From Podarcis vaucheri (Eukaryota): 64,000 nucleotides of DNA. Positions 1,531 to 61,341 of the stretch are shown piece after piece. Made by a program: the position numbers and the translations under genes. How positions within the stretch are numbered: the stretch's first letter is position 1; the number at the start of each line of letters is the position of its first letter. The notes beneath the pieces were generated by a model. It made no database searches. It saw only the letters and a list, made by a program, of their open reading frames with translations, and had not been told where the DNA came from. The stretch lies in the NCBI GenBank assembly GCA_965113315.1, contig OZ220371.1. One strand, 5' to 3'.

Positions 1531-20403
<18,873 letters not shown>

Positions 20404-21355: not shown

Positions 21356-21495
21356 NNNNNNNNNNNNNNNNNNNNNNNNNNNNNNNNNNNNNNNNNNNNN
21401 NNNNNNNNNNNNNNNNNNNNNNNNNNNNNNNNNNNNNNNNNNNNNNNNNNNNNNNNNNNNNNNNNNNNNNNNNNNNNNNNNNNNNNNNNNNNNNN
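21356..21495. other. Assembly gap (140 N) within the NAA15 3' UTR region
   Basis: Run of N. Confidence 0.99.
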
Positions 21496-23559: not shown

Positions 23560-24400
23560 GAGAGAAAGACAGCCAGGGGTGCGAGACGCTCTTGTACTGA
23601 GGGAGGAGACTAGCATGAGCTTAGCACTGGCGAACAATGACAGCCAGATGGCCGCTGCCGCCCCCAACCCGCCATTTAAAGACTCGTCGATAACACCCCA
23701 CTTCTCGCGAGCTTTCGTGTTCACGTCGTCCCTGTTTCCCCCCGCAGAGGCGAGCGGAAACGCCCCCTTCCACGGCTTCGCCTTCTTCGCCTATCAGGCC
23801 CGGCCTATCCCGCGAAAGGGGCGGAGCTGTTCCTCCTACGTGGCTTAACACGCGTGAAGCGGCAGCGGCTTCCTCAGGTGCGGAAGCGAAGCGGCTTGTC
23901 AGGGAGGGGGGAAATGAGCGCGAGCGACGGGGGCGCGCGGGCCTTTTTCGCCTCTCCGCCGCGACGCGAATCCCTCCGCCAGGTTGGGCCTGAGCGACTA
24001 AGCCGCGAGTGACTCGACGCAGCGGAAGGCGCCTTCGCGGGCCCGGCGGCGATGGCGGCGGCCGAGGTGGAGTCGTCGCTGGAGCTGAGCCTGTCGAGCA
24101 GCTACGCGGCGCCGGGGACGTTGCCCCCCGCGCGCTCCCGCATCTTCAAGATCATCGTCATCGGGGACTCGAACGTGGGGAAAACGTGCCTCACTTTCCG
24201 CTTTTGCGCGGGCCGCTTCCCGGAGCGCACCGAGGCCACCATCGGGGTGGATTTCCGAGAACGCGCCGTCGACATCGACGGGGAGCGCATCAAGGTGCGG
24301 AAAGCCGAGGTCACCTCCTCGGGCTGCTTTTCCCCTGCCAGGCTCAAGGGCTGTTCTGCCGGCTGCCTTGCAGCTGGCACGTAGTAGATGCAAAGTGGCA
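23560..24400 (+). promoter_or_regulatory. CpG island / RAB33B promoter and first exon
   Basis: Sharp rise in GC and CpG density. Contains YY1-like motifs (CAGATGGCCG at about 23645; CCGCCATTT 23669-23677), TCTCGCGAG 23703-23711 and ETS-like CGGAAG sites. Confidence 0.9.
24052..24294 (+). CDS. RAB33B: RAB33B exon 1 coding part (MAAAEVES...GERIK)
   Basis: Kozak gcgATGG; donor gtgcgg at 24295. Confidence 0.96.
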
Positions 24401-26039
24401 GGGAGTCCGGGGCTGCTGCTGCTCCTTTAACAGGTGTGTGCAGAAAAGGCAGGTGCTTTGCCTCGGCAAGCGACGTCTGCTGAGATTTCCTCTGCTGCAA
24501 TACTGTTATAGGTGCAGGTGGCGAAAGATTGCCGCCGGTTGGACTAGATGACCCTCGTGGTCCCTTCCACGAGGGTCATCTTACACCAGGCCACCTGGCA
24601 GGAAAGAAGTGGGCAACTCCAGTCCTGTTGCTCATCCATGCTGCCTGGAGCTGACACACGGCCAAAAATAATGGAGGTCATTTGTTATACTTGTATCTCA
24701 GTTGCTTCCCCTGAATCAAGATTTGTAACAATCTGAGTGCGGTAACTTGAGGAAGGCCCCGTGAGCTTCATCGCTGAGCCCGAGGCTTGATGTTATAGTT
24801 GCACCTGTAAACATGCTGTTAGTTGCACCTCTGAACCCCTTGGTCTAACTAACTGTTGTTCATGTGCTGAGTGCTGAACATGTATTAACATCACACAGTT
24901 TTGAAGATGTGCTCATATTTAGTCAAACCTGTGGCCTATTGCATCTCTTTATCCCAGTGTTTAAATAAGCTCACAGAAGTTTGCAAACACATAATGCTAG
25001 TTTGCTAGGGCCTTGCAGAATTCTTCATCTCACCTCTAGCAACATGTGGTTTCTATGCTGGGTGCAGAGAAGTAGAGCTTCCATGCATCCAGCTGCATGG
25101 AATTCCTGGTTACCTTTGGGTACCAGCTAGTGCTTAAATGGAAAGTTGTGTCATCCTTATACATGTACTGTTATGTTAAGCAATGACACCTCTGCTTTTT
25201 AATTGAAATGTAAGCATGCTGATTTTTAAACCCACATAGATCCTAATTAAACTTAATACTCATGTCACAATGTGAATTTCTTGGCAAGCTCTTAATTCCT
25301 GCAATACCTCCATCTACAGTGAAAGATGCACAATTACTAATATTTAGTATAACTGTTTTTGAAAAGCTGATGCATAAAAAAGTGTTTGCAGGAAGCTTCA
25401 CAGCAAAAGTTTTCATTTATGTTTTGTTGCTGTTGCTGAGATATAAAACCACTGACCTCAAAGACCCTTATGAACAGAAATCATAGCAATATAAAAGTAC
25501 TGTTGAGTTAAAGTTGAAATTATGCCTTTCCACCAGCCTGAGTGAAATCATTTTTTTTCTTGTTTCTCTCCCTTCTTTCCCCTTCTTGGTACATCTAGAT
25601 TCAGCTCTGGGATACAGCAGGGCAGGAGCGATTCAGGAAGAGCATGGTACAGCACTATTACAGGAATGTACACGCAGTCGTTTTTGTATATGATATGACA
25701 AATATTGCCAGCTTCCATAGTTTGCCACTGTGGATCGAGGAATGCAAACAACACTTGCTCACCAATGATATACCCCGGATTTTGGTTGGAAATAAATGCG
25801 ATCTGAGAAGTGCAATTCAGGTCCCTACAGACATGGCTCAGAAATTTGCTGACACTCATAGCATGCCACTGTTTGAAACGTCTGCTAAAAACCCTAATGA
25901 CAATGATCATGTGGAAGCCATATTTATGACCCTGGCTCATAAGCTCAAGAGTCACAAGCCACTCATGCTTAGTCAGCTACCCGATAACACAATTCACCTA
26001 GAACCTGCAGTAAAACCTGCCATGCCATGTTGGTGTTAG
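24052..26039 (+). CDS. RAB33B: Ras-related protein Rab-33B, 227 aa, two coding exons (24052-24294, 25599-26039)
   Basis: Motifs GDSNVGKT (G1), TIGVDF (G2), WDTAGQERF (G3), NKCD (G4), ETSAK (G5) and C-terminal CWC prenylation site. Splice sites AAG|gtgcgg and ctag|ATT. Syntenic with NAA15 and SETD7. Confidence 0.97.
25599..26039 (+). CDS. RAB33B: RAB33B exon 2 coding part (IQLWDTAG...AMPCWC*)
   Basis: Long polypyrimidine tract, ctag acceptor, stop TAG. Confidence 0.96.
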
Positions 26040-30251: not shown

Positions 30252-30355
30252 TTAAGTCATCCTGATATACGGAGGTGGTTTGGGCATATCATCATCAGCT
30301 TCCATATCTAAATCTGAAAGTTTTACAGGAGAATTAAAAATTGTATCCACTTGAC
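30252..30355 (-). CDS. MS4A-like gene last coding exon (QVDTIFNS...DDDMPKPPPYIRMT*)
   Basis: gtcttttctattctag|GT CAA...ACT TAA, 104 nt. Confidence 0.83.
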
Positions 30356-33300
30356 CTAGAATAGAAAAGACACAGAGTGAGCATAAGTAGCTGCAGAAAG
30401 CAAACTTTGCCTTGATTACGTGTGCTGGTTACATGCAGACTAGACTGTTGTAATACACTGGTTATACATGGGGCTGCCTTTGAAAATAGTTTAGAAACTT
30501 CCACTGGTGCAGAAGGTAGCTGCCCAGATTCTTGCAGGGATCAGGCATTGGGAACACATAATACCCATATTTTACCAAATGCATTATCTGCCAATTCATT
30601 TCTGGGCGCCATTTAAAGGACTGTTTTTTACACTTAACCTAGCCCTAGACAATGTAGGGCTTTATTTGAAGGACAGCCTACGCTCTCAGAAATCTGCCCA
30701 GGCTTCAGAGGCCTAGCCTTGGTCCACCATCAATATCTGTTATTGTGGGCACCAATGACACAGATTTTTCTGTCTTCCTCCCTAGAAATATTACCAGGGT
30801 TTCTTTATTGTCTTTTAATTTTTTCTGTTCTAACCCACTATTGATTAAAAGAGCTATGTTGGGTTTTACAGTTCAATATTAATAAGAACAAATTAAACTA
30901 AAACCAGCAGTAAAGTAATGTGCTGGATTTTATTTTTAACCACTCCTGCCTAGTTTTTGTAATTGTAGTTAGATTGCTTTTATGGAAATGGCTTTTAATT
31001 ATTATGATTTTAAATAATATTTATATAGCCCAAATGTCTTCCTTACATATTCATTATTTGACTTACATATTTAGTAAATCTGAAATTAATTTTCAAGTAA
31101 AACAGTGAGAACACCTACATACCAGATGGAATGCAAACTAATTCTGCAATTTGTAGCTGGTCTTCATTAGATTCTAGCCTTTCCTAAGAATGAGAGCATG
31201 AGATTGTTAAATAGGTTCACCTGAGAATAGCACTGATCTTAGAATGTGCAGTTTTCGAGACAAACACAGTTTCATTTTGTAATTTGGTTAACCAAAAGTA
31301 ATTGTAATGGTATAATAATGAACAAGACTAAAAGTAAAAAGTTCTGCAGTTTAAGAAAAAGAAGCTATTCATCATATAATGCCCACCACAGTTTACCGTA
31401 TTTTCCTTTACAAAAGTATTCCTTAAATTTTTGCAGCTACCATTATCATAATTAAGAGATTTATTTCAAACCATTCACATTCAATAACCCTGATAATAAG
31501 CTGAACAAACATATCTATCTAAGAGATGCATACATATGGCAGTTATCAAACAATGAGAGGTCATCCTTAGAAGTGGTAAATGCTACATAATTGGCAAACC
31601 TTAAACACAAGGGGTAGTTTTCACTCAGGGTACACTGACTGAAATTAATGGAACTTATTTAGTCATATTCATTAATTTCAAAGGATCTACTCTGAATTAA
31701 ACTTAGCTGAATACCACCCATAGAACTGTGAACCTAGTAAAAAACATTTTATGCACACACCTGTCAAGAAAAACATGCAGAAGGGGCAGTTATATACAAT
31801 TTATACCCTACTCCTTAGCAAGTGCACAGAAGCTTATATAAGGATGCCAGTTATTTACCATCAAAGCACTGATGAGGTTCATAGCTGTTTAGTGTATACA
31901 GTGTGTCCACAAATCATTTGTTTCCAAATGACAATTCCAAAAATTAGTTTTGTGGGCATTTTGGGCTTAACTAGTTGAAGGGGAGGGGGAGTTAAGGAAA
32001 TATGGCAACTTCATATCAAACTGTCCATAAATGTTTTTACAGAATCCCAAAAGGCATTCCTTCCCAGTACAAAACAAGTAAACCCACCATATTTAATGGC
32101 AATGTTGCTACTTACAAGTCCAGTGACACTGTCATAGCATGAACAACATGGAAGACTTCGGCAACTCAAATAAGCAATAATCAGCACAATAAAAGCACTG
32201 AAAAGCGATGTAATCAGAAGTGTGATGTTGGCTCCTTCTACAAGTTTACCAAGCACAAATGCCTGCAACACAGAAAATGAGCACACACACCCTTTATCCA
32301 AAAAATGCAATTCAACCCTAGGAGTGGTGTGGGTATTGTTTTTAAAGCGCCTGGAAATTCTCTCTCTTTTTTTGTATTTTAATTATTTTACATGAAAAGG
32401 AATGACAAGTGAAAAACAACAATAAATAGTAACTGATAAATAGTTGAGCAACCACATATATGATCTATACATGTATACAAACTGATGGTGTCAATTAATA
32501 TCCTCAAATTGGGTGGATAAAATGAAAGTAATATATAAAAGGCAGACCAAACCCTGATCTGCCCCCAGTGTCTGTGCCAGTAGGAGGCATCCTTTACTAT
32601 GGAACTCCAAACAATACCTGCCATAAAAGGCATTTCAGGACCAAGAAGGGGGTGGTTGAGCCATCCAATGATTTTGCCTCTGCTGTGCTGGCCTGGACCT
32701 TGTTCAGTAAAGAAACACACAGAGTGATTTTCTTGCACCATCTTCTGCCCCAAACTGATGTGAGTGACAGGCCTTTGGGTGTGCTAGTTACTCTGTCACT
32801 CCTAAACTGTGTGCAATGTATTCAAAAGGGCAGAAACTGGATAGTTTGATACTTACAACAGCTGGGTGATGATAAGAGGACACATCGTCAAACTCTTCAT
32901 ATTTTTCACCATACTCTAATGTTATAGACGTATAGATGATTACAAGTAGCGTGACAAAGCAGGAAAATACAGAAGCAATTATCATTGCATTCACCTGTAC
33001 AAAAGGTATGGGGATAGAGAAGACCAGAGTTAAATTTGGGCTTCAGGTCAAAGGATGAAAAATAGTTCCACATATGCCTCTTATGCAATCTTTGTACACT
33101 ACAGTAATTTATTTTCCAGAGTAAATTTGGAGGAACATGCATTCACAATACAATGTCCAAAGTGTGGGTATGAATCAGTGAAAATCAAACCTTTCCTTTC
33201 CTAATTACACCTACCCGCTGCCCCCCGAGCCTGTGGGGCTGGCGGTGGGAGGAAGTGCTGCTTTTCCCCACCGCCAGCCTCAAAACCAGGTCCGGGAGCA

Positions 33301-36300
33301 GCGTGAAGGTGTTGCATGCCTTCCCGCTGCCCCCCGAGCCTGTGGGGCTGGCGGTGGGAGGAAGTGCTGCTTTTCCCCACCGCCAGCCTCAAAGACCAGA
33401 CTCTCCTGACTTCAGCGAAAGCAATGCGAAGCCTCCGGAGTGCAGGCTTCAGAGGCTTCGTGTTGCTGTCGCTGAAGCCAGGGAGCCTGCATTCGCTCCA
33501 TAGGACGCACACACATTTCCCCTTAATTTTTGGAGGGAAAAAGGTGCATCCTATAGAGTGAAAAATACGGTAAATACCGTAAATGGAAATCAACATATTT
33601 AACTGTGTTATATTTCATCCTGTGTTTTTAGGGAGTATGTGAAGGTGTGTTTTAAGCCCATTCCCACACATGCCTTTCTTGGAAGCAAGATCCATTTAAA
33701 TGCATGAGACTTTCTTAGACGCAGTAAAGCTGCCAGAAAGAATACATTTGAACAAAAAGTACTGAGCAAAGATACCTGTGGATTTGGGCAATCAACAGAA
33801 GGGATGTTACCAAGGCAGCCAAGAAACCAGATAGGTAGAAACCGTTCAGATTTTCTAGGAAAGCAGCATAGTGGATCAAAATAAGTGGGGAATGTTGTGC
33901 TGCATTCATTAGAAAGAGATTGGCTGACCCAGCTGCTGGTTTGCTCTGTTCCGCTTCTGAGTGAGCAAAGGACCCCTCCAGGAATCACACAAAATCACAC
34001 AATTTGACATTACCATCTAGTCTAGATTTGAGAAGGTGATGGTGACCAGTTGCAGCAGAAAAAAGATGGTCAGCTGCCGTGTTTTCCCAGCAGGTTTTAG
34101 GCTTAACTAAGACCCATTTCTACTTCAGCCATTGGACTCATCACCCAAGGTCAGTTAATGCTCAAAGTATGGATGGTGTGCATGGATCTTTTAAACATCC
34201 ATGTCTGGGAACTCCAATTATGGGTGTTTAAAAACATGCCCAAAAACAACCATTGTGCTTGCTATGTAAAGGGTATTGAAGGCCAAAGGTGGAAGAGGTG
34301 GTTAGGAATTTTATTCCTTCCCCTTTAACATAAATAATAATATTATATATGTATAGATAAAATTTGTGCCGTTTATTCTAAAACATGTATATTCTTACCT
34401 TTCAACTGTAATGTGTTACTGCAATCCAGCCATTTGGAGCAACACAGAATGACTGATGAATTTAGAGACAGACTGAAAAAATTTTGAACTGCTGTTAAAG
34501 TGTTCGTCCTTGAGACCTTTAATCTGTTGTGGATTTTAAACTCTAAACCCCAAAATCATACATGTATGATCACTTTAATTTTTGCCTATGATGTATATCT
34601 CCAAACACTTCAGGGCAGAGATTAAAGTTTGTTGTTGCTTTTTGTTGGCATCCATCTGTCTTGAGGGACAATGGAGTGTGCCTTTGGGGGGTCAAGTCAA
34701 ACCACTGTGCAGTACCAAAGTGACCTCCCAGGGGTGCAAGCCTGGGCAGTGTGTATGGGGGTCCTGGGCTACCCATATGATAAGAACCTCCATCTCGGCC
34801 TTGTTGATGTGGTCCCAAAGAAAAGTAGAGCAATATGTTTGGTACCAGCTTGGCTGCAGGAGTTGCTGGAAGGAGGCATACAAGGTGCCATCGAACCATC
34901 TTAGGGACTCCACTCCAGATTTTTGTAGGGTTTACTCTTTAGCCTCCCCCTCCCCTCCCAAATATACCCTGCAAGGCAGCAGAGGTTTAGGATCAGAGTT
35001 TTCCTTCTCCTAGATGGGCTACCTTCCCGCGTTGATGAGCCCCATCTGCTCCTCAGACGTGAAGTAAAAGTTATGTAAATAAAAGGTTTATGTATTTATT
35101 ACTTATAGAAAGTCAGCTGTATGATTTGTCCCCATCCACTTTAAACAAAATGCAATAGAAACATACCAAAACAGGATTCTTTCTCAGTGAAGAAAACAAA
35201 GCCATAATTCCAGGAATAGCCATAAACTACAAAAGAAAAGGTAAAGGGGATTAAGCTGGGGGGGGGGGATGCCCAACTTTAGCATATAAAAAGAAGTGGA
35301 AAAAAATTAACTTCAGGAAGATTAAAACAAACTAGAGGTTTTATTTTAGAGTTTTAACTGATTTTTACTTTTTTGTTACATCCTTGTAAACCACTTAGAT
35401 ATGATTGTAGTTAAGCAGTGTACAAATATAAATAAATACACTGGTTGGCAAGTGGTTTCTAAGACACCAGCTCCCGATCAACAACCAGCAGATCTATGAA
35501 GCACAAAGGCTGAACGTGGTTTATTCCATAATAAGTAAACATCTTTCCTTTACGCACGATTTCAGAGAAGGGAATGTAATTGTTCAGCTGGCTGTTAAAC
35601 ATGGGCTCAAGATTCTTGGTCAATTTCACCAGATGCTTTTTCTTATACAGGTGAAAATGTGATTGACACATAAGGATAGTAAAGTAATTGACGGCTATCA
35701 GATCACTAGCCCGCCATGCTAGAAGGGCAAGGAGTTGGGTATGTGAAACACACAAAGGAGGAATATTAAACGTGCACCTTTCAAAGTGTAAATCATACTT
35801 TCACCCATTGCATTTCTAACATTAGCTTGGGATCCAAGAAAATAAAAAGTAAAAAAATTATTACAACAAAGTGATTGTACCATAGTAAAATGATGCCACT
35901 AAATTATTCGAAGTCACTACTAACAGTCCCAGCTGCTTCTTGCTTGTAGCATCACCACCACAGCTCCCATGTGCCACTCCAAAAGAGTGTTTGTAATTAC
36001 TACAGTCAGCTAGTAGAATCAGAACAATTCAACTTCTGCAATGCAATTTTCTCCCAGAAATCATTCACTTTTCTCAGTCCTATTCTCCCCTCCTGAAGTA
36101 AAGCAGAGGTCCTAGAAGTATCATCCACTCTCCTAATTAGCCCCACCCACTCAAAACACCAGCTTCAGCTATGGGTGCCCCCTCCTTTCAACTTCACTAG
36201 CTAAATGAAATCTCCATGTTCTAAGCAATATATTTCTGAATATCAAATGTAGAAAACAAACATGTCCCCCTCGTAAGTTCCTGCAGGCAAAAATGTAAGA

Positions 36301-37547
36301 CAGGGCCTTCTTGTCATCAGCCCCACAATTATGGAATTTCTTCTAACTCACAATTTGAGTTTTCAGCCCCAGGTGAAGAATGACTTATTTGCCCAGGTTT
36401 TTGGAGGCATCTACTACACTGTTGATTTGGATTTCAATTGGTTTTAATGTAACCTGCTTAGGGATTGCCTTGGCATTGAAGAACAGGTGGGAAATAGTTT
36501 GAATACAGAAACAGAAAAAACTTCCCATTGGCATTTGACTGGCCGCAGCTGGAAATGGAGCGCTGGAGAAGATGGAGATAAGCAACTAGCTTAAGACCAC
36601 AAGCCATATGAAGTGCAAACACCATAAATCAATTCCCCCTTCCAGTTAATTTACCTCTAAAAAACATTAAATTCTCCTATGTTTCCCAGGAGAAAGAAAA
36701 GTCCTTATTCCTCTCTCACCCAGACCAGTCCAGAGCATTCCTTCTGTGAGCCTGATCCTCAGCTCCCCCACTTCCAAATTAAGGAGATACAAGTCAGAAA
36801 TCAAAGGCAGCTGCAGTCACACTTGCCCTCTAGGGCCAGGCTTCCTCAACCTCAGCCTTCCAGATGTTTTTGGCCTACAACTCCCATGATCCCTAGCTAG
36901 CAGGACCAGTGGTCAGGGATGATGGGAATTGTAGTCTCAAAACATCTGGAGGGCCGAGGTTGAGGAAGCCTGCTCTAGGCTCTTACCACAAAACAACTAG
37001 GCCAGCACTCAGGGACGGCCCAAGGTGTTTCAGCACCTGAGACGAAATGCCCTGCTGTCACCCCTGCAATGGGGGCGGGACTCTTTAAGGGCTTCTTCTC
37101 AGCAACAGGGGTCTCCCAGCAGCTGGGCAAAGCCCCACCACACTGTCCAGCAGAGTGTGGAGATCTGCTGGCTTGTGGAATATAGAACCACATGTTCTCT
37201 ACAACAGTGAACAAATTCCCTGTATTATACCAAATTGTACAACCCTCCCTGCTGTACTTCCGACATCTACTGAATACTTTTTTTTATTGAAGCAGGCATT
37301 TCAATTGAAGTTTGATTTTATAGCCTTATAGTTTATACATCGTTAATAAAAAGGGGTGGGGGGTAGAATTTATATAGCTTACCACTCCAGCCCAGATGGG
37401 TATCCTAGATTTGCTCAGTGCCGAGTCCCTTCTGAAAGCACCATCGATTAATCCACCGATGATACAAACTGTAGCACAAGCTATCTGGAGGAGGCCCAAG
37501 AGAACCATACTTTTCTGATTGAAGATGAAATATCTGTAGCGATCCAT
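30252..37547 (-). CDS. Uncharacterised CD20/MS4A-like four-transmembrane protein, 224 aa, six coding exons
   Basis: Exons (- strand) 37547-37383, 35226-35167, 32994-32857, 32262-32116, 31183-31123, 30355-30252. All GT-AG with good polypyrimidine tracts, phases 0,0,0,0,1. They join into 675 nt with no internal stop. Four hydrophobic segments, MS4A-like LGLLQI and PIWAG motifs, C-terminal PPPY. Confidence 0.88.
30420..30790 (+). mobile_element. Degenerate L2 ORF2 3' fragment in the last intron of the MS4A-like gene
   Basis: LVTCRLDCCNTL and VQKVAAQILAG...EHIIPIFYQMHYLPI resemble the L2 ORF2 C-terminal region. Confidence 0.7.
31123..31183 (-). CDS. MS4A-like gene coding exon 5 (ERLESNEDQLQIAELVCIPS-G)
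   Basis: ctctcattcttag|GAA...TCTG|gtatgt, 61 nt. Supplies the phase 0 to 1 shift needed by the last exon. Confidence 0.8.
31612..31720. repeat. Old palindromic MITE-like repeat; relative at about 58130-58235
   Basis: Shared tgaaattaatgga...tctactc...ataccaccc sequence and self-complementary arms. Confidence 0.55.
32116..32262 (-). CDS. MS4A-like gene coding exon 4 (AFVLGKLVEG...CCSCYDSVTGL)
   Basis: ttttctgtgttgcag|GCA...CTT|gtaagt, 147 nt. Confidence 0.9.
32857..32994 (-). CDS. MS4A-like gene coding exon 3 (VNAMIIASVF...YHHPAV)
   Basis: tttttgtacag|GTG...GTT|gtaagt, 138 nt. Confidence 0.9.
33201..33570. mobile_element. Left-truncated mariner/pogo-type non-autonomous transposon related to 14511-15506
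   Basis: Right end ...cctatagagtgaaaaatacgg+TA; internal duplication of about 70 bp at 33215-33284 and 33324-33393. Confidence 0.85.
34630..35055 (-). mobile_element. Interspersed repeat, probably an RTE-related non-autonomous retroelement
   Basis: GC-richer block with ggatcagagttttccttctcctagatgggctaccttccc, recalled from squamate repeats; family assignment uncertain. Confidence 0.5.
35167..35226 (-). CDS. MS4A-like gene coding exon 2 (FMAIPGIMALFSSLRKNPVL)
   Basis: ccttttcttttgtag|TTT...TTG|gtatgt, 60 nt, phase 0. Too short to appear in the ORF track. Confidence 0.88.
36837..36972. mobile_element. hAT-type MITE
   Basis: TIR CAGGCTTCCTCAACCTC / GAGGTTGAGGAAGCCTG; near-perfect TSD ctctag(g)gc; internally the reverse complement of 10122-10257. 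Confidence 0.9.
37383..37547 (-). CDS. MS4A-like gene coding exon 1 (MDRYRYFIF...RIPIWAGV)
   Basis: Strong Kozak gaaATGG, in-frame TGA upstream, donor GTG|gtaagc. Upstream acceptor(s) at 37582 and/or 37634 imply a spliced 5' UTR. Confidence 0.9.
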
Positions 37548-53770: not shown

Positions 53771-53951
53771 TCACTTCTTCTGAGTAGCCTGGAAGGCTTT
53801 CAGTTCCACCTGATACCAGCCTGGAGCTTCCGGCCCATTTTGTCCAATGGGATTGTGATCGTATCCATAAGCCACTGTTAATTCTTCATCCTTCTCAACA
53901 GCCCTAATAGTGCGGATACATTTAATCAACCCAAAACGAGGATGAACAAAC
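53771..53951 (-). CDS. SETD7: SETD7 exon 8 (FVHPRFGL...QATQKK*)
   Basis: tctag|G TTT...AAG TGA, 181 nt. Confidence 0.96.
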
Positions 53952-56900
53952 CTAGAAAGGAAGGAAGCATACACAGTCAGAAAAAGGAAACTCGGCAAGC
54001 CCAAACGATGTATTCGTTTTCTTGAAAGCTTTACATATATCCTGTGTGTTTTTTAGATATAGGTGACGCAGCACTACCAGAAAACACTATAGGAGTGTCA
54101 CTGACCACTTTTTTTCCTGCAGCAAAATATTCATATCGTAAAACCTTTATTGGCATCACATACAACATCCAAAACAAATCAATACAGAATTGCCACTTCC
54201 CCAGTGGCACAAAACATTTGCTAAAAAGAAAGGAGGCAGAGCAGTCTATCGTCACATCTCTTGGTCTCCAGGGAGATCAGACGTCTGCAGTGTATTTCGA
54301 CGACAAAAAACCAAATAGAGATATTTAGCCAGCAGCAAAATATTGTTAAATAGCAACAACAAACGTTTTGGGAAAAGTTACAGTTAAGCAGTCCATCCAC
54401 TGTAGATAACACAGGAGAGTGGATGGGACTAAGAACAGAGGGCAGCAGAAACAGCTCTCTTGACTCACAGTAGGGCCACCGCTGAACGCAGAGGCAAAAC
54501 CAAGAAGATACACCTCAGCATCTTCTTCAACGAAAGATCCTACCACCCACCTCCCAGCAAAATATTTGTGGCTGGTGCAGGATTTTACACTTACAGTAGA
54601 TATGGGGTGTCTAACTTTTTCTGGACAGAGGGTTGTATTCACCTATTATCAACCCTCGGGAGTCACATGTTAATGTGGGCACGAACAAAGCACACAACTG
54701 GGCGTAGTTAATGAGTCTGCCTTCCAAAAGGGTCTCCCACCAGCAATCCTACACCATTTAAAATTTATTTTCATTCATTAAATTCGGTTAAAAACCATTT
54801 AATTTAAAAAAATGACAAATTTTGTAGGTTTTTTAGGAGGAGGGACCCCAAAAATCTTCAGGAGTAGCCTGACCATGGGTGGTCAGGGCTAGCCACCCCT
54901 GACTCAGAGCATGGTGGATAAGTGCCATTTTCCAGGAATGCTTCCCTTGCTTTCAACTGTATTTTTCATCAGTTTTCCCCACCCACTTGATTTAGTGCTG
55001 TAGTTGCCGTGATCCTTTGATATCATCTGCTATCGCATTGGCAGATACAGTTCTGACACCTGAAAAGCAGCACCTTCATCAAGCATAAGTTTAGTACTTA
55101 CGAGTCATAGACACTATTTGGTGTGAAAGAATGATTTGCCTTGTGCCCCAATGAGGCACAGTATTTGGCTGCGTGGTTGTAGGGTTCCGGTACATCTATG
55201 ACTGTTTCATCATCAAGGGATATTGTGTTACCATTCAGAGCCCAGTCCCTGCCATCCACCTAAAACAGACATTGTTGCAGTGTCAACTTTGTGTTTTTGT
55301 CAGCCTGAAGATACAATGCAGATTTTTCTTGTGTTACATGCTTTAAAGGAGAGAGACCAGTGGTATTCAATCAGGCTTGCAAGTACAGTCATGCCTCAGG
55401 TTAAAGATGCTTCGGGTTAAATCTTTTCAGGTTGCGTCCTGCAGCGACCCGGAAGTACCAGAAAGAGTTACTTCCGGGTTTCGCTGCTTGCGCAGAAGCG
55501 CAAAATGACGTCACGCGCATGCGCAGAGGCTGTGAATTGCGACCCGCGCGTGCGCAGACGCGGGTTGTGTTCCTTTCAGGTTGCGAATGGGCCTCTGGAA
55601 CGGATCCCGTTCGCAATCAGAGGTACCACTGTACTCTATTAGGAAACAAATTTAAGAGAAGGAAAACATGCCACTCCAATAGTCCTGACCATAGTAAGTT
55701 GCCTTAACTTCTTGCCCTTTCTGCTTCATTACCTCTACACAATAAAAATCAGTTTTACAGCAGACTTGTGGCACACTTACTGAAATCTCTAATCGAGTGA
55801 ACAAAATCATCCTTAATTTTCAAAGGCTTGCTGGACTGATATTAAAGAAACTGAGAAGCAAGATACACTTTTAACAAGACAATTCTCTGTAGAGAACCTT
55901 TGGGTCTTCAAATACTTGTGAGATCCCATAATGACTACAGGATCCTTGACCATGCATTATATGAAATCAACACACTTTTTTTACCCAGTCCTGGTGAATA
56001 CTGAAGCATTTTTGAAATAATAGGGTGAACAAGCAACAAAAATGTTTCCAAAAAGGTAGTGTTTCAGAAGTAGCAATGAAAAGTTCTCACTTCACTTTAC
56101 CTCCTGGTGTGTAATTCGTACGCCATTGTAAAAGGACATAACTGTGCCAACCTCAGCAGATACTTTAGTAAATAACCCTTCTCCTGCGCTGGAAATGAGA
56201 GATGCATCTACATATACCCTGATGAAAGGAAAGAGTAAAAAGAAAGTACAGTGTCATTATTACTACTCTGTAATACACTAATATTTTTAGAAAACTATTT
56301 TATTAGTTTGTGTAAATTTGAGATCATTAATTTTGGGCCATGGGAAGAAATACTAGCACAGGTGTCAAATGTGACAAAGCCTCTGTGTTTAGAAAAAAGG
56401 GAAAGTGTATCAATACTTTGCCCAACAAAATGCAGAGTCCCATCAAGTTTCTGTCCCTGCCAAATCCTGATTATGTAAATTGAAGATCATCTTCTGAACA
56501 GCCAAATAAAAGTATTGCAATGTTTTTTTGGGCAAGGAGTGGGTGGAGAAACAGTTATTTGTAGCCACTGAGAGATATATTAAACAAAGAAATACTTTAG
56601 TACAGTACCACAGTTTTTCACTACTGTACTTAAAAATTCATTTAAAAATCACTTTTAGAAGAAATATAAAAGTTTCCTCCTAATAGTTACAGATTTTTCA
56701 TACCAATTCATGTTTTTAGGAAAACATTTCAATTCAATTAAGCTCATGCAAGATAACCATCAAATTAATGAGCTAATATGATGTCATTTGCACACAAGTA
56801 GTTCTGTTTGCAATTCAAAGGAATAAAGTGTTGCTGAATGCTGTCTTAAAATGCGAAGCAGAACAACTAAATTGTTTCTTTGCAAATATTTAAGAAAGGG

Positions 56901-59900
56901 AGCGAAACGATACACATAAATTATTCTACCTCTCCGATTCATAAGGATCAGGAAGAAGTGCATTTGTAGAAATGCAAGATGAAGTAGATTTATCAAAACT
57001 GTATACTGGGCCTAAAAACAAAGCAAAACAAAACAAAAAAAGTACACAAATTAATGGACAATCAAGATGAAGATGCAGGTCTCTCTCTTATTAAAGTGTT
57101 AGGCATTCAACACACCATAAGGAAATTAAGTTTTTAAAACAAGACAGCAAAAATATTGTATTTAGGTCTGTCTACTATATAATAAAACAGTGCTCTGCAT
57201 ACATTTTTTTCACCATTTTCATTTCTCCTCAAAACTGCAAGCAGTATTCAGTCACCTTTGTAACAAATATGAGTTGAGGTTTATACATGCTAGAAATAAT
57301 GTTTCCCAACAGTGCTTTAACATTATATTTCCCCCCTGAATATGTAAAACCAAGTTAAAAATGCATGCACCCCACATCAACTATGTGTGGTCAGTGCATA
57401 TTATCACCATCACTTTTCCTCAACAAAATCAAAAGCAGCAGCAATTGATATAGAACCGGGACCCAATTTCATTACCTTTTACCAAAAGAAGTGGAAAGAA
57501 AAATGTGTCTCAACTGATATATGGTATTTATACTTTGCATACCAGGTCCAAATTCAAAATGTAAAGTGAAGCGACCCTAAACTACCATTCCTTATACTTC
57601 TTCTGGCTCGGAGTGTACAACCCGCTCCAATCCATTTTGTCAACACACCATGGCAGCTCTAATTTTAGTAATTCTATCTTGCAGAGTGGAGGGCATTGGC
57701 ACAGGAACAAAATTGGAGCAATGTGAAAATAGAAAAACTGAAAGCATTGTTTGCTCAAACTTATCTCCAAAAAGGTGTGTGGAAGCCATGCTACACAACA
57801 CCATTTTGCACATCAAGGAGAACCTACTGCCTGGCAGCACTTCAAATTGTGGCTTCCCCTCTTCTACGGATACAAGAGTTGCCAGCTTTGCTTCCAACAT
57901 TTCACCATCTATGAAGTGTCCATAATAGGCCATCTTCCCATCAGGGTACACATAGGCTATCTTCTCGCCAGTCATCTCTCCCTCTTCATTAACTTCTCCA
58001 ACCAGATGTCCACCATCCTGAATGAGAAGCATAATATTGGTACAATAAATGCTGCACCTTTTTAAGAGGGAAATGTTTCTGTGTGCACACACGTTTTTAA
58101 AACCTTTCAATAGCAACACAGATATTGCACTGCATCCAACTAACTTTTTCTCAGAGAAGACCCATTGAAATTAATGGACCTAAGTTAATCATGTCAATGA
58201 GTCTACTCCAGGTATAATTTAGATGGATACCACCCAAAAGTAACAACTGTGCTAATTGAAATACGTTTATAATATTTTTGTTTCATAGGTACCAGCTGAA
58301 GCTTAGGTTATTTAAACCTCACTTCCTGCTGCCTCTGATCTTTTGCTACCCTGTACAGATCTCAGTGACTTGTGTTTATTCCAGCAATCCAGTTCTGCTA
58401 TAACAAAGCCCTGTGTAAATCCAGGGTATTTCTACAAAAAAAAGGGGGGGCACTTCCAAACAAATTGCAGCCAAATTAACCATAAACCAAGTAAAATAAC
58501 TGAACAGTATTCTTTAGCTCTTCAATCCATAAACAGATAGATGGATAAATAAATAACCTGCAGCGGATTTTTTTTTTTGAGGGGTTTTGTGAACCAAAGA
58601 TAAAAACCGTAAGAGCCTTGTTAGAGATCCATTACAGCTTCATCTCCAAGATTGTGACAGCCATTATGGGCCTGTTCACTATTTTATTGAGAAGCATAGA
58701 ACAGACACTTCTCTGAACAGGTTCTTTGCGTCTCTAGTCATGCCTAGTAAGTTATATATATATATTTAACTTCCCAAGATTATCCAGTTAAATGCTGATA
58801 TTTATAAACACAGTTTTTACACAGAAGTCACATTGACCTTTGGGGGGGTGGGGCTGGGGAGGACAGCAAAAATATAGATGTTTAAAAGCACACTGAATCC
58901 TTTTTTCTAGCTTCCAAGTTCAGAACATTTTGTTACAGCGGACTGATGTCTAAAGCATGTGCATAGTTACTATTCAGTATTTATTTAGGCAAAGTGTCAC
59001 TAGCTTGAGTGGCCTGAATAGAGCTATTCATTTGTGAAAGCCAGAGGCAACCCTGCTATAATGGTTCTAAATTAAAGACAGTAGAGAACTATGTTCAGCA
59101 AAGTATTTATGAAGAAAAGCACCTCTCTTAGAATGAAAAGTAAAACCCACAAAGGTTTGACAAATCTTTAAAAAGATGCACATGGCTGAGAAAGGCACAT
59201 GGTGCGTTTTACTCTCATGTACACAGTTTGCACACAGCAGCAACTTGTGGAAGGCAAATGTACCCTATCACGCATAATCTGCATCCAAATTCTGAGAAGC
59301 CACAACCACCACAAGTGTGAAAAGGATTGCTAGGATTCTGGTAGGCTGCCAAATCACAACCCTTTGCTCTCCTTTGCAGGTGGCAGTTATGCAGCCCAGC
59401 TGTCTCTCTCAACAGCGCAACGGGATTTGTCTTCCCCATGTGTAAGATATCACTTCATCCCCTACTTTGCTGCCACACCTCCCCATTTAGGTTTATAACT
59501 CATTTCCCACCTTGCATATTTGAAAAAGTCCAACGTACTTACAGGGTAGTATATCCAACAAATCCCACATCGAATATTATCTTTGTATTGCCCTTTGAAT
59601 ATCAGTCGCCCATCAGCATCATATTCCTGGGCTGGCCCATTTAGTTCTCCATCTACGTAAGTGCCATGAAGAGCTCCTCCATCTTCATATGTATATACAC
59701 CCTGGCCTTGCAGAGCATCATCCACATAATAGCCTTCTAATGTGCTGGTAACGAGAAAAGGGTAGGGCACAGGGATCAATAGTATCTAGTTTATTATATG
59801 AAATGTTCTCAAAGTAAAAATGTCTCATTACCTTAAGGACACTCTCCCCACAATGCAGAACTGCTAGGGCTTCAATATCAGCCTCAGCCACTTTGCTCTC

Positions 59901-61341
59901 TGTACCATCATCTCAGGTAAGTGAGCAACAGGACCTTCTTGGTAGTGGCCCAGTAACTCTACCATTCTGACTTGCGGAGATCTGTCAGGCTCCCTCTCTG
60001 GTTCATTTTCATCACAAGTTGGAAACATTTCTTTTCTGGGCAGCCTTTAACATCTCAGTTTTTACTATCACTGGCTTTCTATACTTGTAGATCATTGCTC
60101 TTAATCTGTTTATGGAAGTGTTTAAAATGTGTGTTGCTTTTTAATTTGGTTTTTAAACCAAATTACTGGAGGCTAAACCCCTGCTTGCTCTGCTTACCAA
60201 TCCACCTGCCATTCCCTCCACATTAACACTTTAGCACTTCCCCTTCCCACCCCATGCAACTACCGGTATTAAGCTTGATTTTCCCCCTCCCAAACCCCAT
60301 TTTCTGATACCACTTCTCTCTTCTATAATGCAATCGCACTTTGTCTCCCTGTTTTCACCTTCACCCCCATGCCTTTGCCTCCTCCTCTTGTGCAACCTCC
60401 CTTGCACACAACCCCCCCCCCAATAACCTCATATTATACATCTCCCATACACTGTATTGCTAAGCACCCTTTTTACCTTCTGCCCAATTATGAAGACACT
60501 ATCCCCTGCTATTCTTCAGACTCTTTCATGCCAGTTTTCATATTCAACCCCATTCCGATGCCACCTGCTTCCTCCTTTCTTGCACCCTGATTTTCACCAT
60601 CACTTCCTTTCTACCTCCACCGCCTCCTTACTTTTCTGAACTGTCCCTGGCACACGGATTAAACCCATTTCCAGACTTCATCCTCTCTCCTGTTCTGCAG
60701 TCTCCCTTGTGTGCACACCCCATGCTATTACTGTATGTTTAAGGTGACTAGAACCTTAAGAGCAAGCCTGTCAGTTATCTTGCTCAGTTAGAGAAGGTTA
60801 CATCCGTTGATGGATGCTGTACATATAATTACTATACTGGACATGGAGCTTTGTGTTGAAGACAACACATGGTACCAGGAGTGAAATACATTGTGGGAAG
60901 GTACTATGGAATGTTTCAGGGCTCTAATGAGGCAGCTGAGGAATGGAATAGGGAGAAGTTTAGAACAGCTTTTTTTCCCTCCCTTTCAGTGTCTCTCCCT
61001 TCTTGCTCTACTCAAACAGCATTAGCAGAGTGAACTGCAAGGGTAAGGTGTGGGAGGAGATTTATTAACTTTGTCTTATTTTCACAGCCATAGTCTAGAA
61101 AAAACCCCCACAAAGTTATAAAAATATTTGAAGTATTAAGCAAGCAAGCAAGCAAACAAACAAACAAACAAACAAACAAACAAACAAAGCCATACCCAAA
61201 AGAATGCCTACCTTCCATCAAAGAAAAAGAACTTTCCACGGCCATTCTTCTCTCCGTGCACAAAGTTTCCCTCAAATCTGTCTGTGGAGGAGTATGTGAC
61301 CGTACAGAACCCGTGCGGCATCCCATCATCATCGAGTGCAC
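53771..61341 (-). CDS. SETD7: Lysine N-methyltransferase SETD7 (SET7/9), exons 2-8; exon 1 not found in the window
   Basis: Exons (- strand) 61341-61212, 59744-59543, 58017-57828, 57011-56930, 56218-56101, 55259-55102, 53951-53771. MORN repeats, SET motifs [14 protein letters not shown] and ELTVAYGY, ending [19 protein letters not shown]. Confidence 0.98.
55102..55259 (-). CDS. SETD7: SETD7 exon 7 (VDGRDWAL...[13 protein letters not shown])
   Basis: tttag|GTG...GACTC|gtaagt, 158 nt. Confidence 0.96.
55386..55631. mobile_element. Tc1/mariner-pogo-type MITE
   Basis: TA+CAGTCATGCCTCAGGTT...CAGAGGTACCACTG+TA; paralogue of 8130-8367. Confidence 0.9.
56101..56218 (-). CDS. SETD7: SETD7 exon 6 (RVYVDASL...RITHQE)
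   Basis: atcag|G GTA...CAGGAG|gtaaag, 118 nt. Confidence 0.96.
56930..57011 (-). CDS. SETD7: SETD7 exon 5 (SPVYSFDK...DPYESE)
   Basis: tttag|GC CCA...GAGAG|gtagaa, 82 nt. Confidence 0.95.
57828..58017 (-). CDS. SETD7: SETD7 exon 4 (DGGHLVGE...FEVLPG)
   Basis: ttcag|GAT...GGCA|gtaggt, 190 nt. Confidence 0.93.
59543..59744 (-). CDS. SETD7: SETD7 exon 3 (STLEGYYV...CWIYYP)
   Basis: accag|C ACA...CCT|gtaagt, 202 nt. Confidence 0.96.
61138..61187. repeat. Compound microsatellite (AAGC)n(AAAC)n
   Basis: Directly visible. Confidence 0.95.
61212..61341 (-). CDS. SETD7: SETD7 exon 2 ([11 protein letters not shown]...FFFFDG)
   Basis: ttag|GT...GGAAG|gtaggc, 130 nt. Confidence 0.96.

What the first reader, a model, noticed from the sequence alone, without database searches (positions are those of the whole stretch)
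30252..37547. Intact, unnamed CD20/MS4A-like tetraspan gene between RAB33B and SETD7
Seen in sequence: six minus-strand exons with consensus splice sites join in frame into MDRYRYFIFNQKSMVLLGLLQIACATVCIIGGLIDGAFRRDSALSKSRIPIWAGVFMAIPGIMALFSSLRKNPVLVNAMIIASVFSCFVTLLVIIYTSITLEYGEKYEEFDDVSSYHHPAVAFVLGKLVEGANITLLITSLFSAFIVLIIAYLSCRSLPCCSCYDSVTGLERLESNEDQLQIAELVCIPSGQVDTIFNSPVKLSDLDMEADDDMPKPPPYIRMT (224 aa). It has four hydrophobic helices, and three of its exons are absent from the ORF track. Established knowledge: LGxxQI at TM1 and PxWxG at the start of TM2 mark the CD20/MS4A-like superfamily (MS4A, TMEM176, sarcospan, ENTREP/FAM189). From memory, human 4q31 has no protein-coding gene between RAB33B and SETD7, and the MS4A cluster is elsewhere (11q12). 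Inference: this is a stand-alone family member kept in reptiles and probably lost in the human lineage, with no function I know of.
Basis: partly seen in the sequence, partly recalled or inferred. Interest (0 to 1): 0.9.

Follow-up and report, generated by a model that had tools for sequence, protein, structure and literature searches.

The report
Annotated uncharacterised CD20-like lizard gene
The six exons are a real, intact gene for a small four-helix membrane protein of the CD20 family, but it is already in public databases as an unstudied "uncharacterized protein" found from sharks to birds, so it is an ordinary annotated gene whose function is still unknown.

Summary
Six minus-strand exons with GT-AG introns join in frame to 224 aa. 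The coding parts are 37547-37383, 35226-35167, 32994-32857, 32262-32116, 31183-31123 and 30355-30252.

The gene is not new. All six exon translations match exactly and contiguously RefSeq XP_028600168.2, "uncharacterized protein LOC114604310 [Podarcis muralis]". It belongs to the orthologue group of zebrafish zgc:113425. That group is annotated in sharks, ray-finned fish, coelacanth, amphibians, turtles, crocodiles, birds, tuatara and about 25 squamates.

- **Family:** Pfam CD20 (PF04103) covers residues 17-155 at 76 bits against a cut-off of 27.9. An AlphaFold model matches FcεRIβ, sarcospan and CD20 best.
- **Mammals:** No mammal appears in either best-120 hit list. This fits loss in mammals but does not prove it.
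- **Literature:** I found no paper on this gene.
- **Likely function (inferred, about 0.4):** The cytosolic tail ends in a nearly invariant PPPY-x-R-Φ-x motif. This is an extended PY / YxxΦ signal like those of ENaC and ENTREP. I therefore read the protein as a tetraspan adaptor for NEDD4-type ligases and endocytic sorting.

The parts
37383..37547 (-). Coding exon 1 (55 aa). It holds the start codon, the conserved N-terminal MDRYRYFIFNQ, TM1 with LGxxQ, loop 1, and the PxWxG start of TM2.
   Evidence: Pfam CD20 scores 26.7 bits on this exon alone. It matches P0228 residues 1-55 exactly.
35167..35226 (-). Coding exon 2 (20 aa): the rest of TM2 and the short cytosolic loop. It is a phase 0/0 exon that is skipped in predicted isoforms of other species.
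   Evidence: It matches P0228 residues 56-75 exactly. The 203-aa isoforms lack exactly residues 56-75.
32857..32994 (-). Coding exon 3 (46 aa): TM3 and the acidic first half of the large outer loop (TLEYGE...).
   Evidence: Pfam CD20 scores 15.6 bits at profile positions 61-98. It matches P0228 residues 76-121 exactly.
32116..32262 (-). Coding exon 4 (49 aa): the second half of the outer loop, TM4, and the Cys-rich juxtamembrane motif.
   Evidence: It matches P0228 residues 122-170 exactly.
31123..31183 (-). Coding exon 5 (61 nt): cytosolic tail with the conserved ELVC element. It ends in phase 1.
   Evidence: It matches P0228 from residue 171 exactly.
30252..30355 (-). Coding exon 6 (104 nt including the TAA stop): tail with IFNSP, an acidic cluster, and the terminal PPPYIRMT.
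   Evidence: It matches P0228 from residue 192 exactly.
30258..30278 (-). Codons for PPPYIRM (residues 217-223): an extended PY motif that overlaps a YxxΦ signal, four residues from the C-terminus.
   Evidence: In 132 orthologues: Y220 in 131, R222 in 125, Φ223 in 132, P218 in 120 and P219 in 120. [PL]PxY is present in 113 of 138 full-length orthologues.
32131..32163 (-). Codons for CRSLPCCSCYD (residues 155-165): a nearly invariant Cys-rich motif just after TM4.
   Evidence: P159 is invariant. R156, S157, L158, C161, C163, Y164 and D165 are each kept in at least 90% of 132 orthologues.
37515..37547 (-). Codons for MDRYRYFIFNQ (residues 1-11): a nearly invariant cytosolic N-terminus that contains R-x-R.
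   Evidence: M1, Y6 and F7 are invariant, and R3 to Q11 are kept in at least 90% of orthologues.

Best explanation
This is the Podarcis muralis gene LOC114604310, the lizard orthologue of zebrafish zgc:113425. It is an intact six-exon gene that encodes a 224-aa four-helix membrane protein of the CD20-like superfamily (MS4A, FcεRIβ, sarcospan, ENTREP).

Shown:
- The gene model and its exact identity to a RefSeq protein.
- Membership of the CD20-like family by sequence and by predicted fold.
- Strong conservation from sharks to birds, with the same intron positions.

Inferred (about 0.4):
- The protein works as a small membrane adaptor.
- Its roughly 69-residue acidic cytosolic tail ends in a nearly invariant PPPY-x-R-Φ-x-COOH.
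- This is an extended PY motif of the ENaC type (PPxYxxL). Such a motif would bind WW domains of NEDD4-family HECT ligases, and it overlaps a YxxΦ signal for the AP-2 adaptor.
- The protein, and any partner held by its four-helix core, would then be ubiquitinated and sorted through endosomes, as shown for the CD20-like protein ENTREP/FAM189A2 with ITCH.
For: - **Exon model:**
- **Identity:** All exons match XP_028600168.2 exactly.
- **Orthologues:** They carry precomputed PF04103 and span sharks to birds at 44-99% identity. Identity falls with phylogenetic distance.
- **Intron positions:** The predicted isoforms of sharks and lizards skip the same exon blocks, 56-75 and 121-169.
- **Family:** Pfam CD20 scores 76.4 bits, E 3.3e-21, over profile positions 2-156 of 156.
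- **Fold:** In the AlphaFold model the four helices have pLDDT of 80-94. Foldseek ranks FcεRIβ first (TM 0.72), then CD20 and sarcospan chains. VIA-align gives Z 15.8 for FcεRIβ, 15.4 for sarcospan and 13.8 for CD20.
- **Sequence link to a solved member:** The family profile hits FcεRIβ at E 9e-4, with LGxxQ and PxWG aligned.
- **Transcription in relatives:** Full-length orthologues lie on Logan contigs of only 1.1-1.9 kb. One snake transcriptome protein (Hypsiglena) also matches. These can only be spliced mRNAs.
- **Tail motif:** Its conservation is shown.
- **ENTREP precedent:** PPxY motifs of a CD20-homology protein bind ITCH and drive endocytosis (PMC8811627).
Against:
- The adaptor mechanism rests on a short linear motif only. 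No binding was tested.
- The tail is modelled at pLDDT below 50.
- About 18% of orthologues, mostly cartilaginous fish with PAPY, SAPY or TAxY, lack a canonical [PL]PxY, although they keep Y-x-x-Φ.
- ENTREP differs from this protein. It has a roughly 340-residue tail with two PPxY motifs, and its authors describe it as single-pass.
Confidence: 0.88

Rival explanations
1. The protein is a non-catalytic subunit of a larger membrane complex. On this reading the four-helix core stabilises or chaperones partner receptors, as FcεRIβ (MS4A2) does in the IgE receptor and as sarcospan does in the dystrophin-glycoprotein complex. The tail motif would only tune its own turnover. This overlaps with the adaptor reading rather than excluding it.
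For: The closest solved structures are exactly these two subunits: FcεRIβ at Z 15.8 and sarcospan at Z 15.4 (Foldseek). The only significant PDB sequence hit is FcεRIβ. The membrane-proximal faces are conserved, and the N-terminal R-x-R (R3, R5 in at least 125 of 132 orthologues) resembles ER-retention signals that are masked when a complex assembles (established knowledge).
Against: No partner is known. The protein has no ITAM as in FcεRIβ. Identity to these proteins is only 13-18%. Z values near 13-14 are also reached by unrelated four-helix bundles.
Confidence: 0.25
2. The protein is an ion-conducting or ligand-sensing tetraspan, as has been proposed for some MS4A and TMEM176 proteins. The conserved acidic outer loop (YGEE[DE]) would bind a cation or a small ligand.
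For: It belongs to the CD20-like family. Y103, G104 and E105 at the outer end of TM3 are invariant or nearly so, and the following acidic run is conserved.
Against: The solved CD20 and FcεRIβ structures show no pore (established knowledge from the entries hit). There are no polar or charged residues inside the four helices apart from Q21. Nothing here tests conductance.
Confidence: 0.08
3. The exons are a chance assembly or a decaying pseudogene.
For: Nothing found supports this. The only gap is that transcription in this species was not shown here.
Against: The frame is intact across six exons with canonical splice sites. The translation is identical to a RefSeq model. Identity to other lacertids is 97-99%, and to sharks and teleosts 44-55%, with invariant motifs.
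Confidence: 0.01

Closest known systems
zgc:113425 orthologue group (zebrafish placeholder name; 'uncharacterized protein LOC...' in RefSeq, e.g. LOC114604310 Podarcis muralis, LOC100555997 Anolis carolinensis)
   Same: The protein is identical in this species, and orthologues are 44-99% identical over the full length. Length (about 222-227 aa), exon boundaries and terminal motifs are the same.
   Different: Nothing differs: this gene is a member. The group has no symbol, and I found no paper on it.
FcεRI β chain (MS4A2) and CD20 (MS4A1)
   Same: Both share the four-helix CD20 fold. FcεRIβ gives TM 0.72 and Z 15.8; CD20 gives Z 13.8. The LGxxQ motif in TM1 and PxWG before TM2 align. Both match Pfam PF04103.
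   Different: Identity is only 14-20%. The outer loop has no cysteine pair as CD20 has, and there is no ITAM as in FcεRIβ. The tail motifs differ. The 2010 MS4A/TMEM176 survey does not mention this group, and it found no MS4A gene in elephant shark, which does carry this gene.
Sarcospan (SSPN)
   Same: It shares the CD20-like four-helix fold, with Z 15.4 and 14.5 to the sarcospan chains of two dystrophin-glycoprotein complex structures.
   Different: Identity is 13%. The profile search of PDB sequences gave no sarcospan hit at E up to 10. The sarcospan-type large loop is absent. This protein has a C-terminal PY motif.
ENTREP/FAM189A2 (and FAM189A1, FAM189B)
   Same: Both combine a CD20-homology region with cytoplasmic PPxY motif(s). 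In ENTREP those motifs bind the WW domains of ITCH and drive endocytosis (PMC8811627).
   Different: ENTREP is 450 aa with a tail of about 340 residues and two PPxY motifs 42 residues apart. This protein has a 69-residue tail with a single PPPY at the extreme C-terminus. The direct sequence relationship was not tested, because ENTREP is outside the length range of the searches.
ENaC β/γ PY motif (PPxYxxL) and NDFIP1/2
   Same: It is a linear motif of the same form, PPxY followed by Φ at +3, in the cytosolic tail of a membrane protein. In those proteins the motif recruits NEDD4-family ligases (established knowledge; NDFIP is cited).
   Different: The folds are unrelated. The resemblance is in the motif only.

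Membership tests
CD20-like family (Pfam PF04103) | Full-length match to the family profile above the curated cut-off | tested here: met
   P0228 scores 76.4 bits against a cut-off of 27.9, E 3.3e-21, over residues 17-155 and profile positions 2-156 of 156. Exons 1 and 3 alone hit colinearly.
CD20-like family (Pfam PF04103) | Four transmembrane helices | tested here: met
   Hydropathy peaks lie at 16-34, 49-67, 78-96 and 134-152. AlphaFold helices lie at 11-38, 49-69, 73-111 and 119-157, with pLDDT of 80-94.
CD20-like family (Pfam PF04103) | Both termini cytosolic | not testable with these tools
   This is inferred from the family topology only. Loop 1 carries 4 K/R, which fits the positive-inside rule poorly.
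CD20-like family (Pfam PF04103) | Fold like solved members | tested here: met
   The top Foldseek and VIA-align hits are FcεRIβ, sarcospan and CD20. The margin over generic helical bundles is small.
zgc:113425 orthologue group | Full-length similarity to members, highest to the nearest species | tested here: met
   Identity is 100% to P. muralis XP_028600168.2, 97-99% to other lacertids, 70-84% to other squamates, 61-63% to crocodile and turtle, 54-59% to birds and 44-55% to fish.
zgc:113425 orthologue group | Shared intron positions | tested here: met
   Exon-skipping isoforms in sharks, lizards and snakes remove residues 56-75, 76-119/120 or 121-169. These blocks equal exons 2, 3 and 4 here.
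zgc:113425 orthologue group | Conserved position next to SETD7 and RAB33B in other species | not testable with these tools
The only hint is a frog orthologue mislabelled 'SET domain containing 7' in UniRef.
MS4A subfamily proper | Clear sequence grouping with MS4A genes | tested here: inconclusive
   The profile hits FcεRIβ only at E 9e-4 and finds no CD20 at E up to 10. Neither the text nor the supplements of the MS4A/TMEM176 phylogeny mention the group. No joint tree was built.
ENTREP/FAM189 family | Long cytoplasmic tail with two conserved PPxY motifs | tested here: not met
   The tail is 69 residues with one PPPY. ENTREP has about 343 residues and two motifs 42 aa apart.
NEDD4-ligase adaptors (functional class) | Cytosolic [PL]PxY motif | tested here: met
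   PPPY lies at residues 217-220. [PL]PxY is present in 113 of 138 orthologues.
NEDD4-ligase adaptors (functional class) | Physical binding to a WW-domain ligase | not testable with these tools
   No vertebrate ligase sequence was available for complex prediction. This needs a bench test.

The most novel reading that the evidence does not exclude
An ancestral jawed-vertebrate CD20-like tetraspan was kept as a single gene beside SETD7 for more than 400 million years and was lost only in mammals. It acts as a minimal membrane adaptor for NEDD4-family ligases through a C-terminal ENaC-type PY motif. This would be an unstudied regulator of membrane-protein turnover, testable in zebrafish, Xenopus or chicken.
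Probability: 0.3. Interest if true: 0.45.

Novelty: already known. Interest (0 to 1): 0.22.

Why it matters
As a sequence feature it adds nothing new, because the exact protein and its orthologues are already in RefSeq and UniProt. Its value is as a pointer. This is a deeply conserved, single-copy CD20-like gene with three nearly invariant motifs: the N-terminal MDRYRYFIFNQ, the juxtamembrane CRSLPxCxCYD and the terminal PPPYxRΦ. I found no literature on it, and it has apparently no mammalian copy, which may be why nobody has studied it. If the PY-motif reading is right, non-mammalian vertebrates have a small NEDD4-ligase adaptor that mammals lack.

Tried and rejected
- The exons were searched one by one by reference. 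Full-length work then used the public protein P0228, which a tool returned and which equals the model.
- **Literature:** Searches for 'zgc 113425', '113425' plus zebrafish, and six LOC/XB gene ids gave nothing relevant. The MS4A/TMEM176 phylogeny paper and its supplements do not mention the gene or its N-terminal motif.
- **Atlas lead:** The exon-1 search pointed to FAM70/TMEM255 at 0.87. I rejected this because the full-length query lands on the zgc:113425 cluster at 0.97, and all of the best hits are CD20-like.
- **Pfam noise:** PET117 on exon 4 (E 0.56) and several DUF hits are noise.
- **Possible mammalian relic:** The GC-rich Logan cluster P0036 has changes at otherwise invariant N-terminal positions. 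It proved to be closest to duck and swan proteins. P0021 and P0008 are closest to galliforms.
- **Other scans:** Rfam and tandem-repeat scans of the region found nothing relevant. Poly(A) signal counts in the AT-rich 3' flank are uninformative.
- **Unused tools:** Complex prediction was not used, since I claim no specific pair and no ligase sequence was available. The third homologous-protein search was not spent.
- **Earlier findings:** A word search of this scan's findings for CD20, MS4A and PPxY returned nothing.


Full report
**1. The observation**

I fixed the boundaries by reading the splice sites. The coding parts are:

| Exon | Window coordinates | Length |
|---|---|---|
| 1 | 37547-37383 | 165 nt |
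| 2 | 35226-35167 | 60 nt |
| 3 | 32994-32857 | 138 nt |
| 4 | 32262-32116 | 147 nt |
| 5 | 31183-31123 | 61 nt |
| 6 | 30355-30252 | 104 nt, TAA at 30254-30252 |

- All five introns are GT...AG with pyrimidine-rich acceptors.
- The intron phases are 0,0,0,0,1, and the total is 224 codons.
- Exons 2, 5 and 6 lie in ORFs of 36 aa or less. This explains why three exons were absent from the ORF track.
- On the + strand, the window carries a NAA15 exon (3424-3729) and the two RAB33B coding exons (24052-c.24290 and 25644-26039).
- On the - strand, it carries SETD7, with MORN exons at 59462-59779 and 57640-58119 and a last coding exon ending near 53771.
- The gene therefore lies between RAB33B and SETD7. 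It converges with RAB33B and lies downstream of SETD7 on the same strand.

**2. What it is**

- Pfam CD20 (PF04103) hits exon 1 at 26.7 bits (profile 2-39) and exon 3 at 15.6 bits (profile 61-98), in colinear order.
- A HMMER search of exon 1 against 1.8 billion cluster representatives gave 41 hits, several of them full-length proteins of 213-235 aa.
- I used one of these, a shark protein, and then a lizard protein as queries. Each returned more than 200 clusters.
- All of those clusters carry PF04103. They are named 'uncharacterized protein zgc:113425' or 'uncharacterized protein LOC...'.
- They come from chimaera, sharks, rays, bichir, sturgeon, gar, bowfin, many teleosts, coelacanth, caecilians, frogs, salamanders, turtles, crocodile, tuatara, many birds and about 25 squamates.
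- An exon-wise comparison put a Podarcis raffonei protein at 98.7% identity.
- Its 90% cluster contains five lacertid species.
- One member, P0228 = XP_028600168.2 'uncharacterized protein LOC114604310 [Podarcis muralis]', matches all six exon translations exactly and contiguously.

**3. Reality and constraint**

- Identity to the window protein falls with phylogenetic distance: 97-99% in lacertids, 70-84% in other squamates, 61-63% in crocodile and turtle, 54-59% in birds, 50-57% in amphibians and coelacanth, and 44-55% in cartilaginous and ray-finned fish.
- Twelve columns are invariant and about 55 more are kept in at least 90% of 132 sequences.
- Predicted short isoforms in sharks, lizards and snakes lack exactly residues 56-75, 76-119/120 or 121-169. 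These blocks are exons 2, 3 and 4 here, so the intron positions are shared across jawed vertebrates.
- Many full-length orthologues sit on Logan contigs of 1.1-1.9 kb. One comes from a snake transcriptome (Hypsiglena, A0A098LZ25). Because the gene spans more than 7 kb, these must be spliced mRNAs.

**4. Family and fold**

- The full protein (P0228) matches Pfam CD20 at 76.4 bits against a cut-off of 27.9, over the whole profile.
- Hydropathy shows four hydrophobic segments.
- An AlphaFold model built from the 132-sequence alignment has four long helices at pLDDT 80-94 and a disordered tail at pLDDT below 50.
- Foldseek against the PDB ranks the FcεRI β chains first (TM 0.72, E 1e-4), then CD20 and the sarcospan chains of the dystrophin-glycoprotein complex.
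- VIA-align gives Z 15.8 for FcεRIβ, 15.4 for sarcospan and 13.8 for CD20. Generic four-helix bundles reach 12-14, so the margin is small.
- The family profile hits FcεRIβ at E 9e-4.
- The ESM Atlas puts the protein in the 'zgc:113425' cluster at 0.97, with other CD20-like clusters next.

**5. Relation to the named subfamilies**

- It is not a typical MS4A. Identity to the solved MS4A members, sarcospan chains and other top fold hits is 12-20%. The profile does not reach CD20 at E up to 10. The outer loop has no cysteine.
- The 2010 MS4A/TMEM176 survey found no MS4A gene in elephant shark, which does carry this gene. Neither its text nor its supplements mention the gene.
- It is not an ENTREP. 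Its tail has 69 residues and one PPPY, whereas ENTREP has about 343 residues and two PPxY motifs.
- It is best described as a separate, single-copy branch of the CD20-like superfamily.

**6. Mammals**

- No mammal appears in either best-120 list, although both lists reach down to about 48-49% identity and include taxa as distant as sharks and teleosts.
- GC-rich unnamed clusters that might have been something else turned out to be ducks and galliforms.
- This fits loss in mammals, which I put at about 0.8. However, the lists are truncated and no mammalian DNA was searched. No human sequence was used.

**7. How it probably works**

The conserved parts outside the helices are:

- the N-terminus MDRYRYFIFNQ, which contains R-x-R;
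- the acidic start of the outer loop (Y103, G104, E105, then E/D);
- the juxtamembrane CRSLPxCxCYD;
- ELVC and IFNSP in the tail;
- the extreme C-terminus.

In 132 orthologues the last eight positions read [PL]-P-P-Y-x-R-[LMF]-[TAS]. Y220 is kept in 131, R222 in 125 and Φ223 in all. A canonical [PL]PxY is present in 113 of 138 full-length sequences.

- PPxY followed by Φ at +3 is the extended PY motif known from ENaC subunits. It binds NEDD4-family WW domains and overlaps a YxxΦ endocytic signal (established knowledge).
- In ENTREP, a CD20-homology protein, PPxY motifs bind ITCH and drive endocytosis and ubiquitination of a partner receptor (PMC8811627).
- I therefore commit, at about 0.4, to a small tetraspan adaptor that links NEDD4-type ligases and endocytic sorting to itself and to partners held by its helical core.
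- The main rival, which partly overlaps, is a structural subunit of a receptor complex, as FcεRIβ and sarcospan are (0.25).
- A channel or sensor role is less likely (0.08).
- None of these was tested.
I tested only its conservation.

**8. Verdict**

- The gene is already annotated, exactly, in this species and across non-mammalian jawed vertebrates. The novelty claim therefore fails except in one sense: nobody has studied its function.
- Interest is low to modest.

Noticed in passing
window 35167-35226, 32857-32994, 32116-32262: Exons 2, 3 and 4 are all phase 0/0. RefSeq predicts in-frame isoforms in other species that skip one of them, giving forms of 203/207 aa and 178 aa. Each loses one transmembrane helix and so would have a changed topology. 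Whether these isoforms are real is unknown.
   Followed up: partly
window 33207-33399 and 15414-15511: Intron 2 holds an 81-bp segment duplicated directly (33210-33289 and 33319-33399, 97.5% identical) with inverted partial copies. A nearby part of the same intron-2 stretch (about 33478-33575) is 79% identical to 15414-15511, between the NAA15 exon and RAB33B. This is probably an interspersed repeat. It produces the 131-aa ORF at 33201-33596.
   Followed up: partly
window 21356-21495: A run of 140 N (an assembly gap or masked stretch) lies upstream of RAB33B.
   Followed up: no
window 3424-3729 (+), 24052-26039 (+), 53771-61255 (-): The neighbouring genes could be read from ORFs. They are a NAA15 exon, both RAB33B coding exons, and SETD7 exons on the minus strand. 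The SETD7 pieces include the SET-domain end ...AYGYDH...QATQKK* near 53771-53872 and the MORN repeats.
   Followed up: partly
public proteins P0168, P0227, P0059, P0163: Some orthologues carry wrong transferred names in public databases. The Varanus komodoensis and Podarcis lilfordi proteins are called '50S ribosomal protein L23, chloroplastic'. The Leptobrachium protein is called 'SET domain containing 7'. The Phrynosoma protein is called 'MS4A12'.
   Followed up: no
proteins P0036 and P0233-P0239 (Logan), P0121 (Anas): Duck-like copies differ at otherwise invariant N-terminal positions (M1 to A, F7 to L, N10 to W) and read on from an upstream start, like the 308-aa Anas isoform X1. This may be a lineage-specific change of the N-terminus in waterfowl.
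   Followed up: partly
window 37533-37541 (-), residues 3-5: The conserved N-terminus contains R-Y-R, an R-x-R pattern like the ER-retention signals of multi-subunit membrane proteins. This is speculative.
   Followed up: no
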